Shown here one piece after another: positions 25,395-54,533 of a DNA stretch of 64,000 nucleotides (position 1 is the stretch's first letter; every line of letters begins with the position of its first letter). The DNA is taken from positions 62,001 to 126,000 of IMG/VR virus record IMGVR_UViG_3300017917_002466; one strand, written 5' to 3'. The position numbers and the translations under genes were made by a program. The notes beneath the pieces are model-generated. The model saw only the letters and a program-made list of their open reading frames with translations. It ran no database searches and had not been told where the DNA came from.

Positions 25395-25468
25395 GCCCCC
25401 AAAGCATTAAGGTGATGCACTTGGCTCTTAACCAAGAGAAGAAGGTTCAATACCTTTTGGGGGTACCA
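25395..25468 (+). tRNA. tRNA-Lys(CTT)
   Basis: cttgg-ctCTTaa-ccaag; CCA. Confidence 0.9.
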
Positions 25469-25476
25469 AATTTTTT

Positions 25477-25562
25477 GGCGCGGATGGTAAGTGGTTGAAA
25501 TCAAACGGCTGTAACCCGTTCGCCTCACGGCTATGTAGGTTAAAATCCTACCCGCGTCACCA
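25477..25562 (+). tRNA. tRNA-Tyr(GTA)
   Basis: aacgg-ctGTAac-ccgtt; long variable arm; CCA. Confidence 0.9.
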
Positions 25563-25570
25563 AATTATAT

Positions 25571-25644
25571 AGGCTATTGGTGTAATAGAAACACATTTCT
25601 CTCCAAAAGAAAAGACAAGGGAGCATAACCTTTATAGCCTGCCA
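25571..25644 (+). tRNA. tRNA-Trp(CCA)
   Basis: tttct-ctCCAaa-agaaa; CCA. Confidence 0.85.
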
Positions 25645-25651
25645 ATTTTTT

Positions 25652-25726
25652 GCTTCCAAGGTGTTAAGGTTGCATTTCCGTCTTTTAAGCGGTAGGGTCT
25701 TGGTTCAAGTCCAAGTGGAAGCACCA
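25652..25726 (+). tRNA. tRNA-Lys(TTT)
   Basis: ctTTTaa loop; CCA. Confidence 0.88.
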
Positions 25727-25733
25727 AGTTTGT

Positions 25734-25810
25734 GGAACTGTAGCATAATTGGCTAGTGCACCACATTGTCAATGTGGGTTATGCGGGTTCAAATCCCGTC
25801 GGTTCCGCCA
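25734..25810 (+). tRNA. tRNA-Asp(GTC)
   Basis: ccaca-ttGTCaa-tgtgg; CCA. Confidence 0.9.
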
Positions 25811-25818
25811 TAAGTTAC

Positions 25819-25902
25819 ACCCTCGTCGCCTAGTGGTAATGGCACCAGACTTTTAATCTGACGAGCGCAAGCTCTTCACAGGTTCAAATCCTGTCGGGGG
25901 TA
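25819..25902 (+). tRNA. tRNA-Lys(TTT) with long variable arm
   Basis: caga-ctTTTaa-tctg; gagc-gcaa-gctc extra arm; no encoded CCA. Confidence 0.75.
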
Positions 25903-25914
25903 CTAAAAAGTTAT

Positions 25915-26001
25915 TCCAGAGTATGCAAACTGACAGGGCGGCTTGACTGTTAATCAAGTGTGGGAAACCATCTGTAGGTTTAAATCCTACCTCTGGAGCC
26001 A
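25915..26001 (+). tRNA. tRNA-Asn(GTT) with long variable arm
   Basis: cttga-ctGTTaa-tcaag; tgg-gaaa-cca extra arm; G73; CCA. Confidence 0.78.
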
Positions 26002-26036
26002 AATATTAACATTTACGGAATAATAAAAAGATATAA

Positions 26037-26112
26037 GGGTCTGTAGCTACAATGATAGAGCGCGAGCCCGTTAAGCTCGGAGATGTCAGTTTAACTCTGA
26101 CCGGACCCTCCA
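26037..26112 (+). tRNA. tRNA-Asn(GTT)
   Basis: cgagc-ccGTTaa-gctcg; CCA. Confidence 0.8.
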
Positions 26113-26118
26113 AATCAA

Positions 26119-26193
26119 GCAGTGTAGGCAGATCGGCTATGCGTCACTCTTCCAAAGTGAATCTGGTGAGTTCAACTCTCGCACACTGCACCA
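26119..26193 (+). tRNA. tRNA-Gly(TCC)
   Basis: tcact-ctTCCaa-agtga; CCA. Confidence 0.88.
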
Positions 26194-26200
26194 AAATTTC

Positions 26201-26274
26201 GGGGGTTTCTTCTAGTGGAAAGAAAACTGTCTCTGAAGCAGATAACGGTGGTTCAATTCCATCAACCCTCGCCA
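26201..26274 (+). tRNA. tRNA-Gln(CTG)
   Basis: ctCTGaa loop; CCA. Confidence 0.85.
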
Positions 26275-26292
26275 AAAAGTTTTTAGAAGAAA

Positions 26293-26454
26293 GCTGGGAA
26301 ACAGAGGTTCAAATCCTCTACTGAAGTTGATTTATAGAAGTATGCTGAATTTACTGGCAGGTAAATATAAGCAGAAAATATAAATCCTTTACAAATCAAA
26401 GCCTGCCAGCCGAGATAAGTAAAGTTCAGTTCATCTAGTGGGAGAATACCTGGC
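26293..26454 (+). ncRNA. Circularly permuted tRNA-like RNA with long internal hairpin
   Basis: T arm first, D arm last; ACTGAA/TTCAGT and GCTGGG/CCTGGC helices close a cloverleaf. Confidence 0.5.
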
Positions 26455-26461
26455 GTATTAT

Positions 26462-26536
26462 GGTGGTATTGGTGTAGTAGAAGCATCTGATCCTGTGAAG
26501 ATCAAGGGTTCGGAGCATATCCGAAATATCACCCCA
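26462..26536 (+). tRNA. tRNA-His(GTG)
   Basis: tgatc-ctGTGaa-gatca; G-1, C73; CCA. Confidence 0.88.
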
Positions 26537-26544
26537 AAATTTAT

Positions 26545-26633
26545 TAGGAAGTAGGCCCGTAATTGGTAGCGGTCTTGTTCTGGAAACAAGTGGCAATATG
26601 CTCCTGGGAGTTCGAGTCTCCCCTTCCTAACCA
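26545..26633 (+). tRNA. Class II tRNA, Ser(GGA) or Pro(TGG), anticodon register ambiguous
   Basis: cttgt-tctggaa-acaag; long variable arm; CCA. Confidence 0.65.
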
Positions 26634-26641
26634 AGAATTAT

Positions 26642-26716
26642 GCCGCCGTAGCCAAGTAGAAGGTGATGCCTCTGCAAAAGGTAATCTTTGGGGCGCAACT
26701 CCCCACGGTGGCTCCA
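26642..26716 (+). tRNA. tRNA-Cys(GCA)
   Basis: ctGCAaa loop; U73; CCA. Confidence 0.88.
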
Positions 26717-26793
26717 AATTATTTTCACCAATCTGTGATTTTTTATCATCAAAAGATATAAATACCTCTGATGGGTAAACCAAAAGAGGATTT

Positions 26794-27423
26794 ATGGACT
26801 TAGAAAATAAAAGATACCAATATCTAAAAGACTGGAGAAAAAGAACTAAGCAAAGAATGGTTGATGCTTTTGATGGAAAATGTGGAATTTGTGGATATAA
26901 TAAATGTAAAGAAGCATTAGAATTTCATCATATTGATCCAACAAAAAAAGATTTTACTATTTCAAAAAACAAATTTAACAATTGGGAAAAATTAGTTAAA
27001 GAATTAAAAAAATGTATCTGTATTTGTTCAAATTGTCATAAAGAAATTCATAATGAAATAATTAAAATTCCAATTGATGTTAAAAAATTTAATGAAAATT
27101 ATAATGAATATAGAGTAGAAAAAGAAATTAATTATATTGAATGTCCAGTTTGTAAAAAATTAATGGAAGATACACGTAATTATTGTTCGATGGATTGTTT
27201 TAATAAGATTAGAGAAAAAGTAGATTGGAAAATATTTGATTTAAATAAAATGATTTTAACATCATCTATTTTAGAAATTTCTAAAATAGTTGGAGTTTCA
27301 AATACATCTATTCAAAAAAGACTAAAAAAATTAAATCTTCCTTTTAAAAGAAAAGATATTTTAAAATATAAAATGGATGCTGGCGTGGCTGGTAGTGACG
27401 GTTTGTCTGATAAACAAATGTAG
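26794..27423 (+). CDS. HNH endonuclease inside the tRNA array
   Basis: CGICGY..LEFHHIDP..CSNCHKEIH; late promoter and SD hairpin upstream. Confidence 0.87.
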   Translation: MDLENKRYQYLKDWRKRTKQRMVDAFDGKCGICGYNKCKEALEFHHIDPTKKDFTISKNKFNNWEKLVKELKKCICICSNCHKEIHNEIIKIPIDVKKFNENYNEYRVEKEINYIECPVCKKLMEDTRNYCSMDCFNKIREKVDWKIFDLNKMILTSSILEISKIVGVSNTSIQKRLKKLNLPFKRKDILKYKMDAGVAGSDGLSDKQM

Positions 27424-27451
27424 CGAAGTTCGATTCTTCGGGCATCCACCA
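27375..27451 (+). tRNA. tRNA-Ile(GAT)
   Basis: tttgt-ctGATaa-acaaa; CCA; overlaps the HNH 3' end. Confidence 0.82.
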
Positions 27452-27457
27452 AATTGT

Positions 27458-27540
27458 ACCTTGAGCGTAAAGTCGTACATGGCAGAACTCCGGACTCTGC
27501 TGTTATGTAAAACGTGGTGAAAATCCCATCCAAGGTGCCA
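27458..27540 (+). tRNA. Atypical tRNA-Arg(CCG)
   Basis: ctCCGga loop; non-canonical D and T arms; CCA. Confidence 0.55.
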
Positions 27541-27546
27541 AATTAT

Positions 27547-27622
27547 GCCGCTTGAGCAAGTGTGGTCATTGCATCAGTTTGAAGAACTGACTAACACGGT
27601 TCGATTCCGTGGGGCGGCACCA
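27547..27622 (+). tRNA. tRNA-Phe(GAA)
   Basis: tcagt-ttGAAga-actga; CCA. Confidence 0.9.
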
Positions 27623-27729
27623 AGTTTTTATAAATACAAGTAGAAGTTTGGTCCTCAAAAGAAAGATTCAATTTAACCAAAAAGTTACTGAACAAGGAGA
27701 AATCTATTGAAAATACTTAAACCAGGAAC

Positions 27730-27948
27730 ATGAATACAAAAAACCGTTTTGATTTTTTGTTATGTTATTTGGGTAGACACAACTGGAAGAACGAAAGACC
27801 TAAACCTTTATTAACAATGTTCGGTTTAATTATTACATTTGAGAAATATAGATATTGTCAAAGGTGCTTAAAAAGACAAATCTGGGAAGACATTTACGGT
27901 GATTTAAATAAGATTGGAGAATGGATAGACTGTAAAAAGAATTCATAG
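27730..27948 (+). CDS. Hypothetical small protein
   Basis: ORF between tRNAs; C..GRHNW..CQRC. Confidence 0.4.
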   Translation: MNTKNRFDFLLCYLGRHNWKNERPKPLLTMFGLIITFEKYRYCQRCLKRQIWEDIYGDLNKIGEWIDCKKNS

Positions 27949-28020
27949 TGGTGTAGAATAATGTAGTTCCCCTCGTTTTCAGCGAGAAATGTGCGGGTTC
28001 AAGTCTCGTCGCCACTACCA
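27947..28020 (+). tRNA. tRNA-Glu(TTC)
   Basis: ctcg-ttTTCag-cgag; CCA. Confidence 0.8.
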
Positions 28021-28027
28021 AATTTAT

Positions 28028-28103
28028 GCTCCCATCGTCTAACGGTTTAGGATGCCAGATTTTCAATCTGAGAACGTGAGTTCAACTCTCACTGGGAGTA
28101 CCA
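28028..28103 (+). tRNA. tRNA-Glu(TTC)
   Basis: caga-ttTTCaa-tctg; CCA. Confidence 0.88.
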
Positions 28104-28109
28104 AGTTAT

Positions 28110-28185
28110 GCCGTTCAAGCAATTGAAGTCAATGCGCTTGCCTGAAGAGCAAGATAATCCGGGGCAGTACCGGGGGGCGGCACCA
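28110..28185 (+). tRNA. tRNA-Phe(GAA)
   Basis: cttgc-ctGAAga-gcaag; CCA. Confidence 0.82.
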
Positions 28186-28221
28186 CGGAAAATGCGGGGT
28201 CGAATCCCGTCACCACTACCA
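28186..28221 (+). pseudogene. Orphan 3' half of tRNA-Glu
   Basis: gaaaatgcggggtcgaatcccgtcaccactacca resembles the 3' half of 27947-28020. Confidence 0.7.
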
Positions 28222-28255
28222 AATTACCGAAGGACATAATTTTATAAATATAAGT

Positions 28256-28582
28256 ATGAAATGCTTATTTTTACATAAAGGATGTCCATATAATTATAAT
28301 CAACATAACTTACAACATTCTTATGGTTGGATAAGTCCAGATGGTATTTTTTATGGTTGTGAAAAATATGAGCATATAAAAAGATCAGAGTTCTTACTAC
28401 CTAATTATCCAAATTCGGAAGCTAAATTAGAATATGACAGATGGATAAAAGTTTCAGAAGAATTAAATGATAAAATAATATGTTTTGGAAAAGTTACACA
28501 AGCACAAATAGATATATTATCAGATTGGTGTATTGTGCATTGCTTTAAATTTCCACACGAATATATCGATAATTTTCTATAA
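28256..28582 (+). CDS. Hypothetical protein
   Basis: GWISPDG..C..YEH motif; late promoter upstream. Confidence 0.6.
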   Translation: MKCLFLHKGCPYNYNQHNLQHSYGWISPDGIFYGCEKYEHIKRSEFLLPNYPNSEAKLEYDRWIKVSEELNDKIICFGKVTQAQIDILSDWCIVHCFKFPHEYIDNFL

Positions 28583-28635
28583 CATAGTTCATAAATACCA
28601 TTGATGCTATTTACGACATCAACGGGGGAAATAGA

Positions 28636-28815
28636 TTGGAAATTATTTTAGTTTTATCCATAGCAGTATTTTTAGCAAGTGGACTAAGTTTTTATTTTGG
28701 AATGTTGTTTGAAGGATTGAGATGGTCTGAAAAAACAAATATTAACGGAAAAATAATATCTTTTATGGGTAATCAATATAAAGTAACAAAAATACTTTTA
28801 AAACCAAAAGAATAG
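28636..28815 (+). CDS. Small membrane protein (TTG start, not in ORF track)
   Basis: MEIILVLSIAVFLASGLSFYFGMLF; G-rich SD. Confidence 0.45.
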   Translation: MEIILVLSIAVFLASGLSFYFGMLFEGLRWSEKTNINGKIISFMGNQYKVTKILLKPKE

Positions 28816-28836
28816 GACGATTAAAAATTTTAAAAT

Positions 28837-28912
28837 CGGGATGTGGCGCAGCGAGTAGCGCGCTCGCTTTGGGAGCGAGTGGTCGCCGGGGCGGAGCCGG
28901 CCATCCCGACCA
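28837..28912 (+). tRNA. tRNA-Pro(TGG)
   Basis: ctcgc-ttTGGga-gcgag; CCA. Confidence 0.88.
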
Positions 28913-28928
28913 AGTTTCAAAAATTCTA

Positions 28929-28985
28929 AAGGATGAGTTCAGCAATCAAAAATTCTTATTAAAAAAGAAAACAAGTTCATCCTGT
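28929..28985 (+). ncRNA. Y-RNA-like element 1
   Basis: AAGGATGAGTTCAGCAA..TTCATCCTGT; inner ttctt-attaaaa-aagaa hairpin. Confidence 0.75.
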
Positions 28986-28993
28986 GAATCAAT

Positions 28994-29080
28994 GGAAGGT
29001 TAGAGCGTAATTAGTAGCGTGTCGGTCTTGAAAACCGAACCCGAAAGGGCCTGGGGATGCGATTTCCTCACCTTCCGCCA
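28994..29080 (+). tRNA. tRNA-Ser(TGA)
   Basis: tcggt-ctTGAaa-accga; long arm; G73; CCA. Confidence 0.88.
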
Positions 29081-29086
29081 ATTTTT

Positions 29087-29161
29087 GGGGGATTAGTTTA
29101 TTCAGGAAAACATAAGCCTTGCAAGCTTAAAAGCCCGGAGCGTAGCCGGGATTCTCCACCA
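29087..29161 (+). tRNA. tRNA-Ala(TGC)
   Basis: ctTGCaa loop; G3:U70; CCA. Confidence 0.9.
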
Positions 29162-29167
29162 AATTAT

Positions 29168-29242
29168 ACCAAGTGGCAGGTCAGCATCTGAGGACGTCTC
29201 ATAAGCGTTCTGAATAGGGGTCAGCACCCTAACTTGGTACCA
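29168..29242 (+). tRNA. tRNA-Met(CAT)
   Basis: gacgt-ctCATaa-gcgtt; CCA. Confidence 0.8.
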
Positions 29243-29256
29243 AAGGAGTAACTTAT

Positions 29257-29564
29257 ATGCCAAAAGCCACAAAGGAAAATCAACCTTAACAGTTGTAGGT
29301 GAAACTGAAGATGGTAAGAAAGTTGTCAGAGGATTGTTTTTAATAAGCACTTCAATAACTGGATTACCTTTAGAAGATTGCTTAGAAATTTTGAAAAAGA
29401 ATAATCTTGTGGTAGATTGGATAGACTTTATAGAAGATGCTATCAAGTATAAATGGAAGATGGAAAGAACATTGATAAAGATAGAAACATCAGTTGAAGA
29501 AGTTTACGGAAAAGAATATTGTCAAGAAGTAATGAAAAGAATTAAAGGATGGGTTCAGCAATAA
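29257..29564 (+). pseudogene. Hypothetical protein with frameshift near its start
   Basis: SD GGAG plus ATG at 29257 is out of frame with the open KSHKGKSTLTVVGETEDGKKVVRGLFLIS.. frame. Confidence 0.5.
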
Positions 29565-29664
29565 AAATCCATTACAAGGCGCGTGTCGGTGGTTCGATTC
29601 CATCCGCTCCCACATTACTGGAGTGTAGCTCAGTTGGTAGAGCAGCAAAAAAAAGTCCATCCTG
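29545..29664 (+). ncRNA. Y-RNA-like element 2 enclosing a circularly permuted tRNA-Val (YrlA-like)
   Basis: AAGGATGGGTTCAGCAA..TCCATCCTG around T arm, loop-closed acceptor stem and D arm. Confidence 0.85.
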
Positions 29665-29678
29665 AATTTATGTAAAAT

Positions 29679-29757
29679 GCCAAGTTCGCATAGCGGTCGA
29701 TTGCGCCTCTCTTGTAAGGAGGAATTACCGGGGGTTCGACTCCCTCACTTGGCTCCA
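29679..29757 (+). tRNA. tRNA-Thr(TGT)
   Basis: ctTGTaa loop; CCA. Confidence 0.88.
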
Positions 29758-29770
29758 GACTATAAAACAG

Positions 29771-29831
29771 AAGACTGGTTCCAGCAAACCAAAACTATTT
29801 GCTTGTTAAGCAAACAAAGTAATCCAGTCTG
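29771..29831 (+). ncRNA. Y-RNA-like element 3
   Basis: AAGACTGGTTCCAGCAA..CCAGTCTG; inner tttgc-ttGTTaa-gcaaa anticodon-like hairpin. Confidence 0.75.
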
Positions 29832-29860
29832 AGTTTAAATTTTTTAAAAAATAATAAATC

Positions 29861-29950
29861 GGTAAAATGGGCGAGTGGTTTATGCCAGCACACTGCTAAC
29901 GTGCCGGGCCCTAAAAAGCTCCACAGGTTCGAATCCTGTTTTTACCGCCA
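29861..29950 (+). tRNA. tRNA-Ser(GCT)
   Basis: ctGCTaa loop; long arm; G73; CCA. Confidence 0.9.
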
Positions 29951-29957
29951 AATAAAC

Positions 29958-30034
29958 GCACCCATAGTTCAGATAGCAAGAATACGTTCTTGGTAAGAAT
30001 GAGGCGGTTGGTGCAAGTCCAACTGGGTGCTCCA
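29958..30034 (+). tRNA. tRNA-Thr(GGT)
   Basis: cgttc-ttGGTaa-gaatg; CCA. Confidence 0.88.
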
Positions 30035-30037
30035 TAT

Positions 30038-30111
30038 GCCACTATAGCTTAATGTAAAGCCTTCGCCTCGTAAGCGAAAAGATTTCATTTCAAATATGAA
30101 TAGTGGCTCCA
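30038..30111 (+). tRNA. tRNA-Thr(CGT)
   Basis: ttcgc-ctCGTaa-gcgaa; CCA. Confidence 0.85.
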
Positions 30112-30120
30112 AAGATAAAT

Positions 30121-30199
30121 ACCTGTGTATCTCACCAGTCTTCTAAACTGTGTAAGAGTAATTGGATTAATGTGGGTTCAAGTCCCATCACAGGTTCCA
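30121..30199 (+). tRNA. D-armless tRNA-like RNA, anticodon TCT
   Basis: Perfect acceptor ACCTGTG/CACAGGT, T arm and CCA; no D arm; ~20-nt variable region. Confidence 0.65.
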
Positions 30200-30227
30200 C
30201 CTGACAATCAAGGAGAAATATCATATA

Positions 30228-30431
30228 ATGAAACGTAGAGATTTTCTAGGATTTACAATAGCATCCTTACTCTTAGTAGGATGTGCAGCTAGCCCAAATA
30301 TTATATATTATGTTGAGTCAGAGAAAGAAGTTGAATCGATGAGAAAACGATTAGAAGAAAGGGGTGAAAAAGTAGTTGATGTGAAGTTTGATAAAATAAG
30401 TAATTTGTATATCATTAAAATTAAAAAATAA
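30228..30431 (+). CDS. Small putative Tat-signal lipoprotein
   Basis: MKRRDFL..LLLVGC. Confidence 0.6.
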   Translation: MKRRDFLGFTIASLLLVGCAASPNIIYYVESEKEVESMRKRLEERGEKVVDVKFDKISNLYIIKIKK

Positions 30432-30445
30432 TTTAAGAAAGAAAA

Positions 30446-30922
30446 ATGAATAAGCAAAATACTAATAAACTTATAAAAAAACATAGATATATGTTTGATG
30501 AATTATTCAGAAGCCGATTAATCAAAAAAGAACAAGATAGATTGGCAGATGAATTTTCAGAAGCTAAAATTGAAGACGATGAAATAAAAATTGCTCAAAT
30601 AATGGAAGAACAAAGACAAGTTGGTTCTTATTATCCAATAGCCTTTGGTTTTGAATGTGGTGATGGATGGTATAAACTTCTTGATGATTTAATGACAGAA
30701 ATTGAAAAAATAGATACAGAAAAGAAGGTTGAAGTTCATCAAGTAAAAGAAAAATCTGGTGGATTAAGATTTTATGCCGAGAATACTTCAAATGAAATAG
30801 AAGATATTATCAGCCGATATATGGATAGATCATATCAAACTTGTGAAATTTGTGGGCAACCAGGAAAAACAAACAAAAAAGGATGGTTGAGAACGGCTTG
30901 TAAGGAACACGAAAGAAATTAA
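30446..30922 (+). CDS. Conserved phage hypothetical protein
   Basis: FECGDGW..QVKEKSGGLRFY..CEICG. Confidence 0.75.
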   Translation: MNKQNTNKLIKKHRYMFDELFRSRLIKKEQDRLADEFSEAKIEDDEIKIAQIMEEQRQVGSYYPIAFGFECGDGWYKLLDDLMTEIEKIDTEKKVEVHQVKEKSGGLRFYAENTSNEIEDIISRYMDRSYQTCEICGQPGKTNKKGWLRTACKEHERN

Positions 30923-30930
30923 GAGATTAA

Positions 30931-31016
30931 GCGGTCGTGGAGGAATGGCAGACTCACAAGGCTAAGAACCTTGTGGAAGAAATTCCGTGAGGGTTCAACT
31001 CCCTCCGACCGCACCA
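30931..31016 (+). tRNA. tRNA-Leu(AAG)
   Basis: acaagg-ctAAGaa-ccttgt; long arm; A73; CCA. Confidence 0.82.
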
Positions 31017-31105
31017 AATAAAAATATCAAAGAAGCTTTGGAAAAATTAAAACTTACATATAATGGTGGAAATTTCGTAAGAGCAAAGAAAATATTAAAT
31101 GATAT

Positions 31106-31182
31106 GCTGGGGTAGCCCAATTGGTAGAGGCGATTTGTTTAGAGCGAATATGTTGTGGGTTCGAATCCCATCTCCAGTACCA
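31106..31182 (+). tRNA. tRNA-Leu(TAG), short variable loop
   Basis: atttg-ttTAGag-cgaat; CCA. Confidence 0.82.
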
Positions 31183-31190
31183 AGATTTAA

Positions 31191-31265
31191 GCAGTGTTGG
31201 CCTAATAGTTGGGCGCTAGCCTTCCAAGCTGGTTCAAGTGGGAGCGTTACCCACACACTGCTCCA
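31191..31265 (+). tRNA. tRNA-Gly(TCC)
   Basis: ctagc-ctTCCaa-gctgg; CCA. Confidence 0.82.
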
Positions 31266-31272
31266 AGTTTAT

Positions 31273-31366
31273 GCTAAGATGGTGGAATGGAAAGACACGG
31301 TAGCTTCAGAAGCTACTGAGAACCTTGCTAGTTCTCGTGTAGGTTCGAATCCTGCTCTTAGCACCA
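31273..31366 (+). tRNA. tRNA-Leu(CAG)
   Basis: gtagc-ttCAGaa-gctac; long arm; CCA. Confidence 0.9.
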
Positions 31367-31374
31367 GAAATTAA

Positions 31375-31449
31375 GCTCTTGTAGTGTAACGTATAGCACG
31401 AGTCGCGTCGAACGATTTAGTGAGGGTTAGATTCCTTCCAAGAGCGCCA
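31375..31449 (+). tRNA. tRNA-Arg(TCG), G at position 33
   Basis: agtcg-cgTCGaa-cgatt; CCA. Confidence 0.65.
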
Positions 31450-31453
31450 ATAC

Positions 31454-31525
31454 ACTTCCTTAGTGAAAAGGAAATAATATTACCCTACGAAGGTAAAGTT
31501 GATGGTTCAAATCCATCAGGAAGTA
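31454..31525 (+). tRNA. tRNA-Arg(ACG)
   Basis: ttacc-ctACGaa-ggtaa; no encoded CCA. Confidence 0.82.
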
Positions 31526-31529
31526 TATT

Positions 31530-31667
31530 TTTATAATGTAACTCTCTATGACAATTAGCACAAACAAGAATACATTTATCTAGTTCTTTTTGAAAAATAT
31601 CCCAAATTCTATATTTGGCCTTTGAAAGAGAGAATTCTTTTTTATTCTGGTCTAAAAGGTGTACCAA
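31530..31667 (-). pseudogene. HNH endonuclease relic
   Basis: HLLDQNKKEFSLS..ELDKCILVCANCHRELH, paralogous to 26794-27423. Confidence 0.75.
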
Positions 31668-31684
31668 AAAATTATGGAGAAATT

Positions 31685-32074
31685 ATGAATAAATTTAAAA
31701 GTGTAGTTATTAGATCAGCAGAAAATAATATTCACAATAAACAACTAAGAAAAAGAGTTGAATATAGTCTTTCCGCTGACTTTGAATATATACCCAGAGA
31801 AATTGTTGTTTTGATAATTGTCAATGGTAAATATTATTTGAAAAGTAAAAAGGGTGATTATGTAGATGATAAAACTAAAGTTAATGTAGATGCTTTGATT
31901 TATAATAATATTTACTATGCTTATATTTTGGAAAAGCAAAAAAATAAATCAATTACTTTTAAAAAAAAAGAAGACGTTAAAGACAAGAATAAGTATAAAA
32001 ATAAAAATGCCATCGCATTGATTCCTAAAAAATGGATTGAAGATGGAACTATTGTTCTTGATAAAAAAGTATGA
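31685..32074 (+). CDS. Hypothetical protein
   Basis: GGAG SD before ATG 31685. Confidence 0.55.
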   Translation: MNKFKSVVIRSAENNIHNKQLRKRVEYSLSADFEYIPREIVVLIIVNGKYYLKSKKGDYVDDKTKVNVDALIYNNIYYAYILEKQKNKSITFKKKEDVKDKNKYKNKNAIALIPKKWIEDGTIVLDKKV

Positions 32075-32075
32075 T

Positions 32076-32149
32076 GCTCCTATCAGCTAACGGTAGGCTT
32101 CCAAACCTTCAATCTGAGAATTAAGTTTCAACTTCCCATAGGAGTACCA
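32076..32149 (+). pseudogene. Degenerate tRNA-Glu(TTC)
   Basis: Similar to 28028-28103, but the T and anticodon stems are disrupted. Confidence 0.65.
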
Positions 32150-32156
32150 AGTTTAT

Positions 32157-32233
32157 GCGCCTGTAATTCAGTAGAATAGAATAATGGTTTTCTAAACCAT
32201 AAGTCACAGGTTTGAATCCTGTCAGGCGTACCA
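32157..32233 (+). tRNA. tRNA-Arg(TCT)
   Basis: atggt-ttTCTaa-accat; CCA. Confidence 0.88.
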
Positions 32234-32241
32234 AATAACAT

Positions 32242-32316
32242 ACAGCTATAGTACAATGGATAGTGCACTAGTTTCCTAAACCTGAAATTCTGGTTCGATT
32301 CCAGATAGCTGTACCA
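32242..32316 (+). tRNA. tRNA-Arg(CCT)
   Basis: ttCCTaa loop; CCA. Confidence 0.8.
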
Positions 32317-32337
32317 AATTTTATCTCTTTTTATCAT

Positions 32338-32422
32338 AGGAGCCAAGGCAACTGGTTGTGGCCGCCAGTCTTATAAGCTGGGAAACTAAACGAGGTGGGT
32401 TCAATTCCCACGGCTCCTACCA
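32338..32422 (+). tRNA. tRNA-Ile(TAT)
   Basis: ccagt-ctTATaa-gctgg; enlarged variable region; CCA. Confidence 0.8.
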
Positions 32423-32459
32423 AAAATATAAATATTTTCAAATATACAATGGAGGGTGA

Positions 32460-32669
32460 ATGGCACACATCTGCGAATTTTTTCCTTGTCATAAACTAAT
32501 TGATGGGTTTAATTGTAAAAATTGTTATTGCCCACTTTATGACCATACCGATTGTCAACATTTTGGTGGGGAACCTAAATTTCTTTACTCAAAAGGGGAG
32601 AAAATAAAAGACTGTTCAGATTGTATTCTCCCTCATAAGCCAGACTTTAAAATACAAACAAGATATTGA
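32460..32669 (+). CDS. Cysteine-rich small domain protein
   Basis: [24 protein letters not shown]. Confidence 0.7.
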
Positions 32670-32694
32670 CATTTTACAAGGATGATATTATATT
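32666..32694 (+). promoter_or_regulatory. sigma70-type promoter
   Basis: TTGACA-N17-TATATT. Confidence 0.7.
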
Positions 32695-32702
32695 AATAAT
32701 AT

Positions 32703-32778
32703 GCCTGTTTCTTCTAGTGGTATAGGAAGTTTGCCTTACAAGCAGAAAACGATGGTTCGATTCCATCAATAGGCACCA
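32703..32778 (+). tRNA. tRNA-Val(TAC)
   Basis: ctTACaa loop; CCA. Confidence 0.88.
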
Positions 32779-32785
32779 AATATTT

Positions 32786-32856
32786 ACTCGTTTAGTTCAA
32801 CGGAAGAATATCTGTTTGACGTACAGAAGACAATAGTTCAACTCTATTAACGAGTA
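32786..32856 (+). tRNA. tRNA-Val(GAC)
   Basis: tctgt-ttGACgt-acaga; no encoded CCA. Confidence 0.82.
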
Positions 32857-32917
32857 TAAAAACAAATTATGATTCGTTAAATTATGGTAATGGACAAAAA
32901 ACTAAACATAAAAATAA

Positions 32918-32991
32918 GCGGAAGTAGTTCAACGGTAGAATGCGACTTTGCCAAGGTTGAGACAGGAGTTCAACTCTCCTTTTCCGCACCA
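32918..32991 (+). tRNA. tRNA-Gly(GCC)
   Basis: ttGCCaa loop; CCA. Confidence 0.88.
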
Positions 32992-32997
32992 AATTAC

Positions 32998-33074
32998 TGG
33001 GGTGTTGCCTAATGGATCAAGGCGCGGGTCTTTGAAGCCTGTCCGTGAAGGTTCAATTCCTTCCACCCCAACCA
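32998..33074 (+). tRNA. tRNA-Gln(TTG)
   Basis: ctTTGaa loop; U1:A72; CCA. Confidence 0.88.
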
Positions 33075-33130
33075 GATAAACATAAATATTAATATAGGAT
33101 TTGATTTTGAACATTTTAAAGGAGGTTTGT

Positions 33131-33433
33131 ATGAAGATGGTTCCGTTGTACAATAAGTTGATTGTTGAACTTCTTCCCGAAGAGTCCGAAAAGAGATCAG
33201 CAACAGGTTTAATTCTTCCGGGAAAAATTTCTCCGTATTACAGGGGAAAGGTGACTGGTGTTGGTAAAGGTCATTATCAAAATGCTCAAAGAATTCCAAT
33301 GGATGTTAAGGAAGGAGATATTGTAGTCTTCTTAAAGAACTGTGGAATGGGAATTGAGTTTGATAACGGAAATAACCCAACAAAGCTTATTTTGGATGAT
33401 ACAAATATTTACGCAGTAGAGGAAAACGACTAA
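33131..33433 (+). CDS. groES: GroES co-chaperonin
   Basis: PLYNKLIV..SATGLILP..GKVTGVGKG..DVKEGDIV. Confidence 0.9.
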   Translation: MKMVPLYNKLIVELLPEESEKRSATGLILPGKISPYYRGKVTGVGKGHYQNAQRIPMDVKEGDIVVFLKNCGMGIEFDNGNNPTKLILDDTNIYAVEEND

Positions 33434-33489
33434 ATTGTCACAGCCAAACTGGGAATTTTAGATCAAAAATAAAAAAATTGTATATAAAT

Positions 33490-33573
33490 GCTCTGGTGGT
33501 GGAATTGGTATACACATCACGCTTAAGACGTGATGCCCGTAAGGGATTGGGGGTTCAACTCCCCCCCAGAGTA
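33490..33573 (+). tRNA. tRNA-Leu(TAA)
   Basis: tcacg-ctTAAga-cgtga; long arm. Confidence 0.9.
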
Positions 33574-33583
33574 CTAAATTAAT

Positions 33584-33663
33584 GCTCCGGTAGCCCAACT
33601 TTGGTAGAGGCCGTAAGCTCAAACCTTACGTTAGTGTGGGTCCGAATCCCATCCGGAGTACCA
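33584..33663 (+). tRNA. tRNA-Leu(CAA), short variable loop
   Basis: gtaag-ctCAAac-cttac; CCA. Confidence 0.82.
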
Positions 33664-41678: not shown

Positions 41679-41815
41679 AAGAGTAGGTTCTGCAATCAAA
41701 ATAATACTTAAAGGAAGTCCCAATGTCATAGCCGGGGACACAAAATAATCGGTTGTGGTGGACTTTTATTAATTGAGAAAGTTAGTTCTAAAAGAAATAA
41801 TCTGACTACTCTGGG
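41679..41815 (+). ncRNA. Y-RNA-like element 4
   Basis: AAGAGTAGGTTCTGCAA..CTACTCTG. Confidence 0.7.
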
Positions 41816-41835: not shown

Positions 41836-41969
41836 AAGGATGGGTTCGGCAAACCAAAATAGCCCGAAAGGGCATCAAGGTAGCCGTCAATAAAAGGCGG
41901 CGGAGAGGAAGTTAAACTTGCAAAGGCTTCCCTCTCTAAAATAAAAAAGAAACCTTTCTAACATCCTGT
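41836..41969 (+). ncRNA. Y-RNA-like element 5
   Basis: AAGGATGGGTTCGGCAA..CATCCTGT; GAAA-tetraloop and other inner hairpins. Confidence 0.75.
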
Positions 41970-41995
41970 AGCTTATTCTTTGACAAACGCATCTA

Positions 41996-42134
41996 AAGGA
42001 TGAATTCGGCAACCAAATTTGATGCGAAAGCATCACTATAACAGGTTATAAGCTGCGACACCGAAAGGTGACCAGATACTAACCAAGGTTTTTTGGAGAC
42101 TTTTCCCTAAATAAAAATCTTTCAAGCATCCTGT
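41996..42134 (+). ncRNA. Y-RNA-like element 6
   Basis: AAGGATGAATTCGGCAA..CATCCTGT; two GAAA tetraloop hairpins. Confidence 0.75.
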
Positions 42135-42152: not shown

Positions 42153-42181
42153 TTGACAAACTTGTGAGAAGATATTATATT
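42153..42181 (+). promoter_or_regulatory. sigma70-type promoter within the ncRNA array
   Basis: TTGACA-N17-TATATT. Confidence 0.7.
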
Positions 42182-42229: not shown

Positions 42230-42321
42230 AAGGATAGATTCAGCAAACTAAAAGGAAAATAGCTCGCAAGAGCTTATTTGGTTCAAATCCAAAAACGTCG
42301 CAAGACGAAAAACTATCCTGT
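42230..42321 (+). ncRNA. Y-RNA-like element 7
   Basis: AAGGATAGATTCAGCAA..CTATCCTGT; two GCAA tetraloops flanking a tttgg-TTCAAAT-ccaaa T-arm mimic. Confidence 0.78.
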
Positions 42322-42341: not shown

Positions 42342-42401
42342 AAGGGTGAGTTCAGCAACTCAAAAACAAACAACTCATAATTGTTAAAAAGTTCACCCTG
42401 T
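42342..42401 (+). ncRNA. Y-RNA-like element 8
   Basis: AAGGGTGAGTTCAGCAA..TTCACCCTGT; aacaa-ctCATaa-ttgtt anticodon mimic. Confidence 0.78.
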
Positions 42402-42434: not shown

Positions 42435-42486
42435 AAGGTTGGATTCCGCAATTAAAATCCATAATTAGGAAAAAAGACCAACCTGT
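42435..42486 (+). ncRNA. Y-RNA-like element 9
   Basis: AAGGTTGGATTCCGCAA..CCAACCTGT. Confidence 0.75.
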
Positions 42487-53916: not shown

Positions 53917-54533
53917 ATGCAAACTTCCTCAGTAGTAAATTTGATATTCTTTATTCGGGTTTGGACTTTACCCATTACGATTGTCTTTTGAATTTTACCA
54001 ATTAAATTATTTGGAGCAAACAACTGAATACCTGTACTAGTTACACAATTATTGCGCCAATTTGCAGACTTCAAAATGCCACAATTGACAGAATAGAAAA
54101 ATCCTTTTATCAACCCACGATTTCTTGAACGATTTGAAATCACTCTATCATTATCAAGCTTATAACCAACTAAAATATAATTGCCACATTTCTTATAAGG
54201 ATTTTTAATCGTTGTTCCAGTTCCACAAAATACAAGACTCTTTTGCTTATTTTCTTTAGTGGTCTTCATTTCAAAACGGGTTCCGTCAATAAGAAAGTCA
54301 GCATCATGCTCTTGAATAATCTGACAAGGAATCTTTCTACTCTTGCAGACTTTAAAGAAAACCATTTCAAAGAAGTTTCCAACTCCAGAATGATTCTTTT
54401 GAAAAGCCTCTCCAACATCATACCCCATACTACTTGACCAGTACAAGGGAATGTGGGATTCTTTTTGAAATGTATTAACCAGTTCTTCTGCAAAACTACG
54501 ACTTGTAATTTGATTGAAATATCTTTTTCTCAC
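53913..54533 (-). CDS. Hypothetical PD-(D/E)XK-like nuclease
   Basis: DADFLIDGTRFEMKTT. Confidence 0.5.
   Translation of the reverse strand: MRKRYFNQITSRSFAEELVNTFQKESHIPLYWSSSMGYDVGEAFQKNHSGVGNFFEMVFFKVCKSRKIPCQIIQEHDADFLIDGTRFEMKTTKENKQKSLVFCGTGTTIKNPYKKCGNYILVGYKLDNDRVISNRSRNRGLIKGFFYSVNCGILKSANWRNNCVTSTGIQLFAPNNLIGKIQKTIVMGKVQTRIKNIKFTTEEVCI

What the first reader, a model, noticed from the sequence alone, without database searches (positions are those of the whole stretch)
28929..29831. Mini Y-like RNAs presenting isolated anticodon-arm mimics
Seen: the shortest motif copies enclose one 5-bp stem with a 7-nt loop shaped like an anticodon arm. These are tttgc-UUGUUAA-gcaaa (Asn-like, 29798-29814), aacaa-CUCAUAA-uuguu (Met-like, 42369-42385) and uucuu-AUUAAAA-aagaa (element at 28929). 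Copy 7 carries a UUCAAAU T-arm mimic instead. Inference: decoy substrates for host anticodon nucleases, or baits held on the Ro60-like ring.
Basis: partly seen in the sequence, partly recalled or inferred. Interest (0 to 1): 0.7.

Follow-up and report, generated by a model that had tools for sequence, protein, structure and literature searches.

The report
Phage Ro-linked RNAs displaying tRNA arms
A jumbo phage carries nine small RNA genes, next to a Ro60-like ring protein gene and inside its tRNA array, that share one closing stem and one conserved motif and display pieces of tRNA, often a lone anticodon arm. The same RNA class accompanies this protein family across phages, bacteria and archaea, and closely resembles the Class I RNAs thought unique to Dictyostelium.

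Summary
Three hairpins with a 5-bp stem and 7-nt loop sit at the stated coordinates, inside short RNAs (54-59 nt) closed by a 6-7-bp stem. All nine copies in the window share the frame 5' AAG-stem-UNCAGCAA ... stem-CUG(U/A) 3'.

The adjacent DUF2828/DUF7788 protein folds like Ro60 (Z 26). In 164 loci with homologues, 278 such elements lie on the gene's strand and 7 on the other. A covariance model found 32 more, all on the gene's strand, in 59 bacterial and archaeal loci not used to build it.

Among 238 unique elements, 45 carry a 5-bp/7-nt hairpin with an anticodon-type loop (YU-NNN-RA). Shuffles give 1.3. T-arm hairpins number 19, against 0.2 in shuffles. Relatives show anticodon arm plus T arm, YrlA-like domains, and one complete circularly permuted tRNA-Asp.

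So anticodon-arm mimicry on a Ro-like partner RNA is supported. The proposed decoy role against anticodon nucleases is untested. Individual loops drift between orthologues, and only about a quarter of the short copies carry the anticodon-type arm.

Unexpectedly, the frame matches Dictyostelium Class I RNAs (Rfam RF01414) feature for feature, although scores stay below Rfam's threshold.

The parts
28931..28984 (+). Element A. Short RNA (54 nt) between tRNA-Pro and tRNA-Ser. Closing stem GGAUGA/UCAUCC, motif GUUCAGCAA, hairpin uucuu-AUUAAAA-aagaa at 28953-28969, 3' CUG.
   Evidence: Model R1 scores 54.2 bits. Rfam RF01414 matches end to end at 24.7 bits.
29547..29664 (+). Element B. Same closing stem and motif around a YrlA-type tRNA-like domain: T arm GGUGG-UUCGAUU-CCAUC, an acceptor stem closed by a loop, and a D arm. 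It ends 15 nt before tRNA-Thr (29679).
   Evidence: Rfam YrlA RF02553 scores 33.8 bits over model positions 24-84. R1 scores 40.3 bits. Also.
29773..29831 (+). Element C. Short RNA (59 nt) between tRNA-Thr and tRNA-Ser. Closing stem GACUGG/CCAGUC, motif UUCCAGCAA, hairpin uuugc-UUGUUAA-gcaaa at 29798-29814.
   Evidence: R1 scores 59.0 bits although C was not in the training set. The orthologue in a 72%-identity relative keeps the stem but has loop UUUCUUA.
41681..41813 (+). Element D. Long copy (133 nt) with the same 5' motif (GUAGGUUCUGCAA) and a complementary 3' end (CUACUCUGG). The module is complex.
   Evidence: R1 scores 15.6 bits with filters off. Counterparts exist in L008 and L010.
41838..41968 (+). 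Element E. Long copy (131 nt), GGAUG...CAUCC-UG. A GNRA hairpin (GCCC-GAAA-GGGC) follows the motif, then two longer hairpins.
   Evidence: R1 is weak at 12.7 bits with filters off.
41998..42133 (+). Element F. Long copy (136 nt), GGAUG...CAUCC-UG, with GNRA hairpins GAUGC-GAAA-GCAUC and CACC-GAAA-GGUG.
   Evidence: R1 is weak at 11.2 bits with filters off.
42232..42320 (+). T-arm mimic uuugg-UUCAAAU-ccaaa at 42277-42293, flanked by two GCAA-tetraloop hairpins.
   Evidence: R1 scores 39.1 bits.
42344..42400 (+). Element H. Short RNA (57 nt). Closing stem GGGUGA/UCACCC, motif GUUCAGCAA, hairpin aacaa-CUCAUAA-uuguu at 42369-42385.
   Evidence: R1 scores 59.5 bits. Orthologues keep a 7-nt loop on different stems: L010 CUCAAAA, L012 AUCAAAA, L090 CCAUUAA.
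42437..42485 (+). Element I. Shortest copy (49 nt), directly before the Ro-like gene. Only a 3-bp hairpin, ucc-AUAAUUA-gga.
   Evidence: R1 scores 40.1 bits. RF01414 scores 14.1 bits.
42514..43986 (+). Gene for the Ro60-like ring protein (490 aa). Pfam DUF2828 plus DUF7788; PHROG 850 'RNA-binding protein'.
   Evidence: AlphaFold2 pLDDT 89.7. Foldseek's top 13 PDB hits are all Ro60. VIA-align Z 26.0 to 1yvp_A. AFDB Swiss-Prot hits are Ro60 of bacteria and animals.
42153..42181 (+). Promoter-like site TTGACA-17-TATATT upstream of G, H, I and the Ro-like gene.
   Evidence: 11 of 12 consensus matches. This is a consensus match only.
25395..33663 (+). tRNA array (35 of the genome's 36 tRNA genes) in which elements A, B and C are embedded, co-oriented.
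48222..49541 (-). RtcB RNA ligase gene. The RNA-repair context is conserved in relatives.
   Evidence: Pfam RtcB E 7e-59. Same neighbourhood in L008 and L010.
54530..55567 (-). ATP-dependent RNA ligase gene (Pfam RNA_ligase plus PHA02142 OB-fold domain).
   Evidence: Also present in L008.

Best explanation
**What they are.** These are genes for small non-coding RNAs of an undescribed family that travels with Ro60-like (DUF2828/DUF7788) genes. Each RNA has a constant frame and a variable module.

**The frame.** The 5' and 3' ends pair into a 6-7-bp stem. An invariant 5' G pairs with the C of a 3' CUG(U/A). The single-stranded motif UNCAGCAA follows the 5' strand directly. By analogy with Ro60, which grips the 5'-strand motif of the Y RNA stem, this frame is inferred to be the handle held by the phage's Ro-like ring.

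**The module.** It is assembled from tRNA parts:
- a lone anticodon arm (A, C, H);
- a T arm (G);
- T arm plus closed acceptor stem plus D arm (B, YrlA-like);
- in relatives, anticodon arm plus T arm, or a whole circularly permuted tRNA.

**Proposed mechanism.** As with Y RNAs, the module is an adaptor that engages a protein recognising that part of a tRNA and so couples it to the ring. Candidates are tRNA-modifying or tRNA-processing enzymes, RNA-repair enzymes, or host anticodon nucleases. The setting is a phage that invests heavily in tRNA supply and repair: 36 tRNAs, RtcB and an RNA ligase.

**Shown and inferred.**
- Shown: the RNA family, its linkage to the gene, the Ro60 fold, and the tRNA-arm geometry and loop signature.
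- Inferred: transcription and processing, binding to the ring, and the identity of the module's partner.
For: **Family and linkage to the gene.**
- 278 elements lie on the gene's strand against 7 on the other, across 164 loci.
- Model R1 finds C, which it was not trained on, at 59 bits.
- R1 gives 32 hits, none on the opposite strand, in 59 independent bacterial and archaeal loci, down to about 28% protein identity.
- Relatives carry 3-8 copies each, near the gene and in tRNA arrays.

**Ro60 fold.** (Z 26.0).

**tRNA-arm modules.**
- Perfect 5-bp/7-nt hairpins occur in 116 of 238 elements (shuffles: mean 36.8, maximum 54).
- YU-NNN-RA loops occur in 45 (shuffles: mean 1.3, maximum 5).
- T-loop hairpins occur in 19 (shuffles: mean 0.2, maximum 2).
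- Loop positions 32, 33, 37 and 38 are conserved while 34-36 vary. The phage's real tRNAs show the same pattern.
- Within-loop permutations give 5.3 signature matches (maximum 15) against 37 observed.
- Stems covary around similar loops.
- B matches Rfam YrlA.
- Once its frame is removed, an element in L171 is called tRNA-Asp(GUC) by ARAGORN.

**RNA-repair context.** RtcB and an RNA ligase lie nearby here and in relatives.

**Precedent.** Y RNAs tether Ro60 to PNPase and carry tRNA-like domains (PMC4201824). A Thermus phage Ro60 binds phage-encoded Y-like RNAs (PMC12135203).
Against: - There is no expression or binding evidence. No RNA sequencing run was listed, and the complex prediction was not folded.
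- The canonical Ro-binding motifs (GGUCCGA, GNCGAAN0-1G) are absent, and the protein is not a Pfam TROVE member.
- Only 42 of 189 short copies carry a strict anticodon-type arm (53 by the loose rule). Many have other loops or no hairpin.
- Orthologous loops drift: U37 in C's orthologue, a 6-nt loop in A's, C33 in H's nearest orthologue.
- The hairpins of A and H are barely stable alone.
- The elements were collected with a pattern that required AAG, CNGCA, a complementary 3' end and UG. Conservation of those features, and covariation in the closing stem, is therefore partly built in.
Confidence: 0.55

Rival explanations
1. Pure decoy. The anticodon-arm modules are competitive substrates or inhibitors that absorb host anticodon nucleases (PrrC, RloC, VapC or colicin types) and so protect host and phage tRNAs. 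The Ro-like ring only stabilises the decoys.
For: - The loops have anticodon-loop geometry and signature.
- The phage has 36 tRNAs, RtcB and an RNA ligase, the usual signs of conflict over tRNA cleavage (PMC7824862).
- One genome carries several different triplets (UAA, GUU, CAU here).
Against: - No nuclease assay or other test of cleavage was possible.
- The triplets are diverse and are not concentrated on known nuclease targets.
- Many family members show T arms, GNRA hairpins or no hairpin, which a nuclease decoy does not explain.
- A stoichiometric decoy needs high abundance, which is unknown.
Confidence: 0.2
2. Sentinel or regulatory substrate. The displayed arms are cleaved or modified by the same enzymes that act on tRNAs. 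The resulting change in the RNA opens the Ro-like ring or signals the repair enzymes.
For: - The RNA-repair genes are linked here and in relatives.
- Y RNAs are thought to gate Ro60's cavity, and tRNA fragments regulate the Rtc repair operon in Salmonella (PMC7790460).
Against: This is inference only. No regulator of the RtcR type was seen in the window.
Confidence: 0.1
3. The hairpins are only spacers or stabilisers of a protein-binding frame, and their likeness to anticodon arms has no tRNA-related function.
For: - Most short copies lack the strict signature.
- Loops drift between orthologues.
- The sequences are A/U-rich.
Against: - Strict anticodon-type loops are enriched 35-fold and T-loops about 90-fold over shuffles.
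- Position-specific conservation far exceeds within-loop permutations.
- Composite modules exist, up to a complete permuted tRNA.
Confidence: 0.1
4. Cis-acting leader structures, for example autoregulatory binding sites in the 5' untranslated region of the Ro-like mRNA, rather than free RNAs.
For: G, H and I lie between a promoter-like site and the gene, on the same strand. Most elements lie within 1 kb upstream of the gene.
Against: - A, B and C lie 13 kb away between tRNA genes.
- Relatives have copies downstream of the gene and in tRNA arrays.
- Multiple tandem copies with different modules are not expected of a leader.
Confidence: 0.04
5. Decayed tRNA gene fragments or a small mobile repeat with no function.
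For: Some copies sit in tRNA arrays, and the ends form inverted repeats.
Against: - The frame is kept across hosts and down to about 28% protein identity, always on the gene's strand.
- The stems covary.
- The arms are not copies of the phage's own tRNA arms, differing at 4-7 of 17 positions in the best matches.
Confidence: 0.01

Closest known systems
Bacterial Y RNAs (YrlA, YrlB, Yrn1; Rfam RF02553) bound by Ro60/Rsr
   Same: - Encoded next to a Ro60-fold gene on the same strand, in several copies.
- The 5' and 3' ends pair into a stem with a conserved motif on the 5' strand.
- The variable module mimics tRNA.
- Element B matches the YrlA tRNA-like domain.
- RtcB lies nearby, as in the Salmonella rsr-yrlBA-rtcBA operon (PMC4201824, PMC7790460).
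   Different: - The protein is DUF2828/DUF7788, not Pfam TROVE.
- The motif is UNCAGCAA, not GNCGAAN0-1G or GGUCCGA.
- Most members are much shorter (median 56 nt).
- The commonest module is an isolated anticodon arm, which the Y RNA papers read here do not describe. Yrn1 has only a possible arm with a 6-nt loop.
- Rfam YrlA matches only B, and below threshold (33.8 bits against 69).
Dictyostelium Class I RNAs (Rfam RF01414; PMC7919456)
   Same: - Length: 42-65 nt in Dictyostelium; here median 56, 5th-95th percentile 43-67.
- GC content: 32-41% against 38% here.
- A 6-bp stem joins the ends, with an invariant 5' G paired to the C of a 3' CUGU.
- A conserved motif directly follows the 5' strand. 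The commonest 9-mer here, UUACAGCAA (47 of 238), equals the last 9 nt of the Class I motif CCUUACAGCAA.
- The middle is variable.
- RF01414 is the only Rfam family that repeatedly matches these elements end to end.
   Different: - Scores are 14-32 bits, below the gathering score of 41.5.
- The motif sits one nucleotide closer to the stem.
- These are phage and prokaryote sequences, whereas Class I RNAs are reported as unique to Dictyostelia.
- Their known direct binder is the RRM protein Rnp1A.
- No link of Class I RNAs to a Ro-like protein is published in the papers searched.
- Whether dictyostelids encode a DUF2828 protein could not be checked here.
Thermus phage phiLo Ro60 with Yrl1 and Yrl2 (PMC12135203)
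   Same: A phage-encoded Ro60-fold protein with small RNAs encoded just upstream that it binds. It is a structural match to the model (9l5y/9kop, Z 14.5-15.4).
   Different: - phiLo's protein is a canonical Ro60 and its RNAs carry the CGAA motif.
- Its RNAs form a complex with host PNPase.
- The passages read do not mention anticodon-arm modules.
tRNA anticodon arms and T arms
   Same: - A 5-bp stem and 7-nt loop with C/U32, U33, A/G37 and A38, and variable positions 34-36.
- T-loop UUCRANN closed by a G-C pair.
- The phage's own tRNAs show the same signature.
   Different: - The arms stand alone or in partial sets on a foreign frame.
- The acceptor end is absent, or closed by a loop, so they cannot be charged.
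- C36 is almost absent (1 of 67).
- The stems are A/U-rich and weak.

Membership tests
Y RNA / YrlA (Ro60 partner RNAs) | Encoded near a Ro60 orthologue on the same strand | tested here: met
   278 elements against 7 and 32 against 0. The partner has a Ro60 fold (Z 26) but belongs to Pfam DUF2828/DUF7788, not TROVE.
Y RNA / YrlA (Ro60 partner RNAs) | Conserved Ro-binding motif near the 5' end (GGUCCGA bulged helix, or GNCGAAN0-1G) | tested here: not met
   The motif here is UNCAGCAA. Rfam YrlA aligns only to positions 24-84 of B, not to the stem.
Y RNA / YrlA (Ro60 partner RNAs) | tRNA-like domain (T arm, acceptor stem, D arm) | tested here: met
   Present in element B (33.8 bits) and in 8-10 of 249 unique elements. 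It is absent from the short copies.
Y RNA / YrlA (Ro60 partner RNAs) | Reaches the Rfam gathering score (69 bits) | tested here: not met
   The best scores are 33.8 bits (window) and 38.8 bits (L137).
Y RNA / YrlA (Ro60 partner RNAs) | Physically bound and stabilised by the Ro protein | not testable with these tools
   The complex prediction was not folded and no RNA run was listed.
Dictyostelium Class I RNA (RF01414) | 42-65 nt, with a 6-bp stem joining the ends and an invariant 5' G paired to C | tested here: met
   Median 56 nt. The G3-C91 pair holds in 56 of 56 rows, but the collecting pattern required that pairing, so the count is not independent.
Dictyostelium Class I RNA (RF01414) | 11-nt motif CCUUACAGCAA next to the 5' strand (U3, C6, C9, A10 and A11 nearly invariant) | tested here: inconclusive
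   C6, C9, A10 and A11 are kept, and UUACAGCAA is the commonest variant (47 of 238). The spacing is one nucleotide shorter, the first positions differ, and C6, G8, C9 and A10 were required by the collecting pattern.
Dictyostelium Class I RNA (RF01414) | 3' CUGU | tested here: met
   CUG was required by the scan. The next base, which was not constrained, is U in 110 and A in 88 of 238.
Dictyostelium Class I RNA (RF01414) | Reaches the Rfam gathering score (41.5 bits) | tested here: not met
   Scores are 24.7, 31.6, 19.8-20.8 and 14.1 bits. No hit at gathering threshold in 15 loci.
Dictyostelium Class I RNA (RF01414) | DUSE promoter element about 60 nt upstream, and dictyostelid origin | tested here: not met
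   These are phage and prokaryote sequences. A bacterial-type promoter-like site lies upstream instead.
tRNA anticodon arm (mimicry, not membership) | 5-bp stem, 7-nt loop, U33, purine 37, pyrimidine 32 | tested here: met
   C and H meet all features. A has A32. Family-wide, 45 of 238 are strict against 1.3 in shuffles, with the loop profile. One member is part of a full tRNA-Asp cloverleaf after re-permutation.
Ro60 / TROVE protein | HEAT-repeat ring plus vWA domain | tested here: met
   VIA-align Z 26.0, 390-417 residues aligned at 3.3-3.7 A to Xenopus and human Ro60. Hits to vWA domains alone reach Z 9.6 or less.
Ro60 / TROVE protein | Matches the Pfam TROVE profile or PDB Ro60 sequences | tested here: not met
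   Pfam gives only DUF2828 and DUF7788. phmmer against PDB finds no Ro60.

The most novel reading that the evidence does not exclude
Dictyostelium Class I RNAs, held to be unique to social amoebae and of unknown mechanism, are the eukaryotic branch of this RNA family. On this reading they are Y-like partner RNAs of DUF2828 Ro60-fold proteins. One RNA-protein pair would then span phages, bacteria, archaea and eukaryotes, with a frame of a 5' G stem, the motif UUACAGCAA and a 3' CUGU. The variable middle would be a display site, used in phages for tRNA arms.
Probability: 0.45. Interest if true: 0.85.

Novelty: new variant of a known kind. Interest (0 to 1): 0.8.

Why it matters
- **A partner RNA for an uncharacterised protein family.** DUF2828/DUF7788 is large: at least 2,893 relatives among the 8,000 candidates scored in one search. 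This work gives it a Ro60 fold and a specific partner RNA class.
- **A wider view of tRNA mimicry by Ro partner RNAs.** Mimicry extends from one fixed tRNA-like domain to a modular kit: anticodon arm, T arm, half tRNA and whole permuted tRNA. That suggests the ring can be coupled to different tRNA-recognising proteins.
- **A testable candidate in phage-host conflict.** In phages this sits within the contest over tRNA cleavage and repair. It offers a concrete candidate for a new counter-defence or tRNA-handling device.
- **A possible answer for Dictyostelium.** The match to Class I RNAs turns a long-open question, what those abundant RNAs bind and do, into a direct experiment.

Tried and rejected
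- **Complex prediction.** The Ro-like protein with element H was not folded by the tool. No verdict; this is not evidence either way.
- **Expression.** Two searches of sequencing runs listed only DNA metagenomes (a pond sample, the likely source) and no RNA run.
- **blastn against the phage collection.** One 62-nt match to the 'RNA-binding protein' gene of a Vibrio phage, with no useful annotated relative.
- **phmmer against PDB sequences.** No Ro60 hit. The fold search was needed.
- **Rfam at gathering thresholds.** Only tRNAs and tmRNA were found.
- **Reverse-complement control for the loop signature.** Uninformative, because the complement of CU-NNN-AA is UU-NNN-AG, which also fits YU-NNN-RN. 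Within-loop permutations and shuffles were used instead.
- **Model R1 on the long copies D, E and F.** R1 finds them only weakly and misplaces their 3' ends. They are assigned by the motif and the complementary ends read directly from the sequence.
- **Mimic arms as copies of the phage's own tRNA arms.** Rejected: the best matches differ at 4-7 of 17 positions.
- **Identity of DDB_G0281243, and whether dictyostelids encode DUF2828.** This unnamed protein was pulled down with a Class I RNA. Neither point could be checked. The literature search found only the one preprint, and AlphaFold DB hits carry no organism names.
- **First re-permutation of the L171 element.** It kept linker bases and gave a distorted cloverleaf. 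The clean cut gave tRNA-Asp.
Full report
**The observation**

The window is part of a 253,664-bp phage genome with terminal repeats, assembled from a pond metagenome. It carries 36 tRNA genes, all in the window and 35 of them in one + strand array at 25.4-33.7 kb.

| Element | Hairpin | Coordinates |
|---|---|---|
| A | uucuu-AUUAAAA-aagaa | 28953-28969 |
| C | uuugc-UUGUUAA-gcaaa | 29798-29814 |
| H | aacaa-CUCAUAA-uuguu | 42369-42385 |
| G ('copy 7') | uuugg-UUCAAAU-ccaaa | 42277-42293 |

Each sits inside a short element with the frame 5' AAG-[6-7-nt stem strand]-UNCAGCAA ... [complementary strand]-CUG(U/A) 3'.

I count nine copies, all on the + strand:

| Element | Coordinates | Location |
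|---|---|---|
| A | 28931-28984 | between tRNA genes |
| B | 29547-29664 | between tRNA genes |
| C | 29773-29831 | between tRNA genes |
| D | 41681-41813 | between the Hsp20 gene and the ORF at 42514-43986 |
| E | 41838-41968 | same interval |
| F | 41998-42133 | same interval |
| G | 42232-42320 | same interval |
| H | 42344-42400 | same interval |
| I | 42437-42485 | same interval |

These assignments rest. No other copy exists in the genome.

**The neighbouring protein**

- The 490-aa product of 42514-43986 matches Pfam DUF2828 plus DUF7788 and PHROG 850 'RNA-binding protein'. It does not match Pfam TROVE, and it has no sequence match in the PDB.
- An AlphaFold2 model built on 34 homologues has pLDDT 89.7.
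- Foldseek's 13 best PDB hits are all Ro60, including the Thermus phage phiLo Ro60 (E 3.5e-8 to 5e-4).
- The Swiss-Prot AlphaFold hits are Ro60 of Deinococcus, mouse, worm, human and frog, then telomerase p80.
- VIA-align gives Z 26.0 to Xenopus Ro60 bound to Y RNA (1yvp_A, 390 residues at 3.3 A). Hits to vWA domains alone reach Z 9.6 or less.
- 'Ro60-like ring' is therefore right at the level of fold. It is a separate sequence family.

**The RNA family and its tie to the gene**

- I fetched 79 viral, 80 metagenomic and 59 bacterial or archaeal loci encoding homologues, plus contigs of close relatives.
It found 278 elements on the gene's strand and 7 on the other in 164 loci. There are 238 unique sequences, and 102 loci have at least one.
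- Most elements are short: 189 are 75 nt or less. Median 56 nt, GC 38%.
- A covariance model (R1) built from 56 short copies recovers A, B, C, G, H and I at 39-59 bits. C was not in the training set.
- In the 59 bacterial and archaeal genome loci, none used for training, R1 gives 32 hits at E of 0.01 or less. All are on the gene's strand, down to about 28% protein identity (Acholeplasmataceae, Johnsonella, Treponema, Nodosilinea, Fervidobacterium and archaeal bins).
- Whole records of five related phages have 3-8 hits each, both next to the gene and, as here, tens of kilobases away in tRNA arrays.
- The linkage is therefore old and specific.
- One caveat applies. AAG, CNGCA, the 3' complement and UG were required by my pattern, so their invariance and the closing-stem covariation are partly built in.
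- Features the pattern did not constrain are also conserved: U two bases before the C, A between C and G, A after GCA, and U or A after CUG.

**Are the hairpins anticodon-like beyond chance?**

- Among 189 short copies, the minimum-free-energy hairpin has a 7-nt loop in 72. Mononucleotide shuffles give 9.4.
- The 67 distinct 7-nt-loop hairpins have a modal stem of 5 bp (35 of 67). Their loop profile is C32 in 41, U33 in 56, A37 in 56 and A38 in 57, with positions 34-36 variable.
- The signature YU-NNN-RN occurs 37 times. Within-loop permutations give 5.3 (maximum 15 in 2,000).

Counts without folding, for perfect 5-bp/7-nt hairpins in all 238 elements:

| Feature | Observed | Shuffle mean | Shuffle maximum |
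|---|---|---|---|
| Any perfect 5-bp/7-nt hairpin | 116 | 36.8 | 54 |
| NU-NNN-RN loop | 64 | 7.2 | 15 |
| YU-NNN-RA loop | 45 | 1.3 | 5 |
| T-loop U[UC]CRANN | 19 | 0.2 | 2 |

- The phage's own 36 tRNAs have C32 in 24 and U32 in 12, U33 in 35, A37 in 32 and A38 in 31. That is the same CU-NNN-AA signature.
- The same loops recur on different stems:
  - CUCAUAA in H, L019 and L039.
  - CUGUUAA in L038 and L040, against UUGUUAA in C.
  - CUUGAAA in seven distinct hairpins.

**A graded series of tRNA parts**

- Element B contains a T arm, an acceptor stem closed by a loop, and a D arm. It matches Rfam YrlA over model positions 24-84 (33.8 bits).
- G has a T arm.
- Relatives have an anticodon arm followed by a T arm:
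  - L187: AUUGC-CUUUUAA-GCAAU plus UGUGG-UUCAAAU-CCACA.
  - L178: loop CUUCUAA.
  - L184: loop CUUACAC.
- A 124-nt element in L171 has, in order, an anticodon arm (UUCGC-CUGUCAA-GCGAA), a T arm, a closed acceptor stem and a D arm.
- I removed the frame of that element and opened the acceptor loop. ARAGORN then draws a canonical tRNA-Asp(GUC) cloverleaf.
- In at least one member, then, the 5-bp/7-nt hairpin next to the motif is literally a tRNA anticodon arm.
- Module classes among 249 unique elements:

| Module | Count |
|---|---|
| Anticodon-type arm only | 62 |
| T arm only | 12 |
| T plus D (YrlA-like) | 8 |
| Anticodon plus T | 2 |
| Anticodon plus T plus D | 2 |
| D-like match only | 3 |
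| Anticodon plus D-like match | 2 |
| Other or none | 158 |

**Limits**

- Only 42 (strict rule) to 53 (loose rule) of 189 short copies have the anticodon-type arm.
- Loops are not stable between orthologues:
  - C's counterpart in a 72%-identity phage keeps the stem UUUGC/GCAAA but has loop UUUCUUA (U37).
  - A's counterpart in a 75%-identity phage has CUUU-AUGGUA-AAAG.
  - H's counterparts keep 7 nt but read CCAUUAA (C33), AUCAAAA and CUCAAAA.
- The A and H hairpins are marginal alone (-1.1 and -0.7 kcal/mol), and RNAfold closes C's loop to 3 nt.
- The mimic arms are not copies of the phage's tRNA arms.
- The triplets are diverse: UGA 7, GUU 5, UCU 3, then ones and twos.
- The genome has no tRNA with a CAU anticodon, although H displays CAU.

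**Mechanism**

Shown:
- a conserved RNA frame linked to a Ro60-fold gene;
- modules with tRNA-arm geometry;
- co-orientation with tRNA genes (A, B and C) or with the gene itself, behind a promoter-like site at 42153-42181;
- a conserved neighbourhood with RtcB (48222-49541) and an RNA ligase (54530-55567).

Inferred:
- From Ro60 biology (PMC4201824, PMC12135203), the ring binds the frame.
- The module then engages a second protein, as the Y RNA module engages PNPase.
- For anticodon-type modules the partner would be a protein that reads anticodon arms: a modification enzyme, a repair factor or a host anticodon nuclease.
- A pure decoy role is one version of this and is not excluded, but nothing here tests it.
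- Aravind and colleagues note that some jumbo phages carry a TROVE protein as part of RNA repair, with a tRNA-like partner RNA in cellular systems (PMC7824862). In the papers searched I found no description of this RNA family or of anticodon-arm modules.

**An unexpected relative**

- The only Rfam family that repeatedly matches these elements end to end is RF01414, the Dictyostelium Class I RNA:

| Element | Score (bits) |
|---|---|
| Window A | 24.7 |
| L038:3257-3311 | 31.6 |
| Three of four elements in L040:3470-3990 | 19.8-20.8 |
| Window I | 14.1 |

- In the L040 stretch no other family matched.
- All scores are below the gathering score of 41.5, and none of 15 loci gave a hit at that threshold.
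- The defining features given by Kjellin et al. (PMC7919456) line up closely:
  - 42-65 nt and GC 32-41%;
  - a 6-bp stem joining the ends;
  - an invariant 5' G paired to the C of a 3' CUGU;
  - an 11-nt motif CCUUACAGCAA next to the 5' strand, with a variable remainder.
- Here the commonest motif 9-mer is UUACAGCAA (47 of 238). The median length is 56 nt, GC is 38%, and U follows CUG in 110 of 238.
- The motif lies one base nearer the stem.
- That paper reports Class I RNAs as absent outside Dictyostelia.
- Its preprint names four proteins pulled down with one Class I RNA: Rnp1A/CIBP, GuaB, NdkC and the uncharacterised DDB_G0281243.
- DUF2828/DUF7788 proteins exist in eukaryotes, on two grounds:
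  - a fold-cluster hit named 'Plant/T31B5-30 protein';
  - plant papers that mention the domain.
- I could not check whether dictyostelids have one, or what DDB_G0281243 is.
- I therefore report this as a strong resemblance with an untested homology claim.

**Verdict**

- The frame is best described as a new family of Ro-like-associated RNAs. It is Y-like in logic, is not a member of Rfam Y RNA or YrlA, and may be related to Class I RNAs.
- Function remains inferred.

Noticed in passing
window 46207-46280 (-): A tRNA gene with anticodon CUA (an amber-suppressor type; ARAGORN labels it Pyl) stands alone on the minus strand, far from the array. ORFs in the window read open under code 11, so I named no other code.
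   Followed up: no
window 52469-53539 (-): An IMP dehydrogenase/GMP reductase family gene lies in the same neighbourhood as RtcB and the RNA ligase. GuaB (IMP dehydrogenase) was one of four proteins pulled down with a Dictyostelium Class I RNA. This may be coincidence.
   Followed up: no
window 29334-29564 (+): A 76-aa ORF ends inside the 5' strand and motif of element B. Its last codons read ...KGWVQQ across GGAUGGGUUCAGCAA. I did not test whether it is a real gene.
   Followed up: no
window 41862-41875, 42022-42035, 42261-42274, 42297-42308: The long copies E, F and G carry GNRA-tetraloop hairpins (GAAA or GCAA), in E, F and G directly after the motif. This is a recurring module that is not tRNA-like.
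   Followed up: partly
window 25571-25641, 26037-26109, 28110-28182, 30121-30196, 32076-32146, 26547-26627: These tRNA-like sequences are seen by Rfam but not called by ARAGORN. One has a CCA (Trp) loop and one has C at position 33. The last is a weak tRNA-Sec-like match.
   Followed up: partly
window 41136-41570 (+), and L008, L010: An Hsp20 gene directly precedes the RNA array and the Ro-like gene. This order is conserved in relatives at 72-74% identity. Further upstream lie a RimK-type ATP-grasp gene, an HNH endonuclease gene and DNA methylase genes.
   Followed up: partly
L061:1398-1765, L020:2415-2495: In some relatives the Ro-like gene and its RNAs sit beside a phage tmRNA gene and dense tRNA arrays.
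   Followed up: no
L102:1785-1853, L103:458-523, L113:1045-1111, L122:2865-2932, L135:1299-1366: A subgroup has an extra short helix (ACC ... GGU, followed by GAAA) clamping an anticodon-type arm of the form UUAGA-CUNNNAA-UCUAA.
   Followed up: no
family-wide: Position 36 of the anticodon-type loops is A or U in 57 of 67 and C in only 1. In the phage's real tRNAs it is C in 9 of 36. A36-A37-A38 and U36-A37 are the contexts of i6A and t6A modification in tRNAs (own knowledge). A/U richness may explain part of the bias.
   Followed up: partly
window 41611-41640 and 41660-41680, 41982-41999: TTGACA boxes recur just upstream of D and F and at the start of the array. The spacing to any -10 box is unclear except at 42153-42181.
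   Followed up: partly
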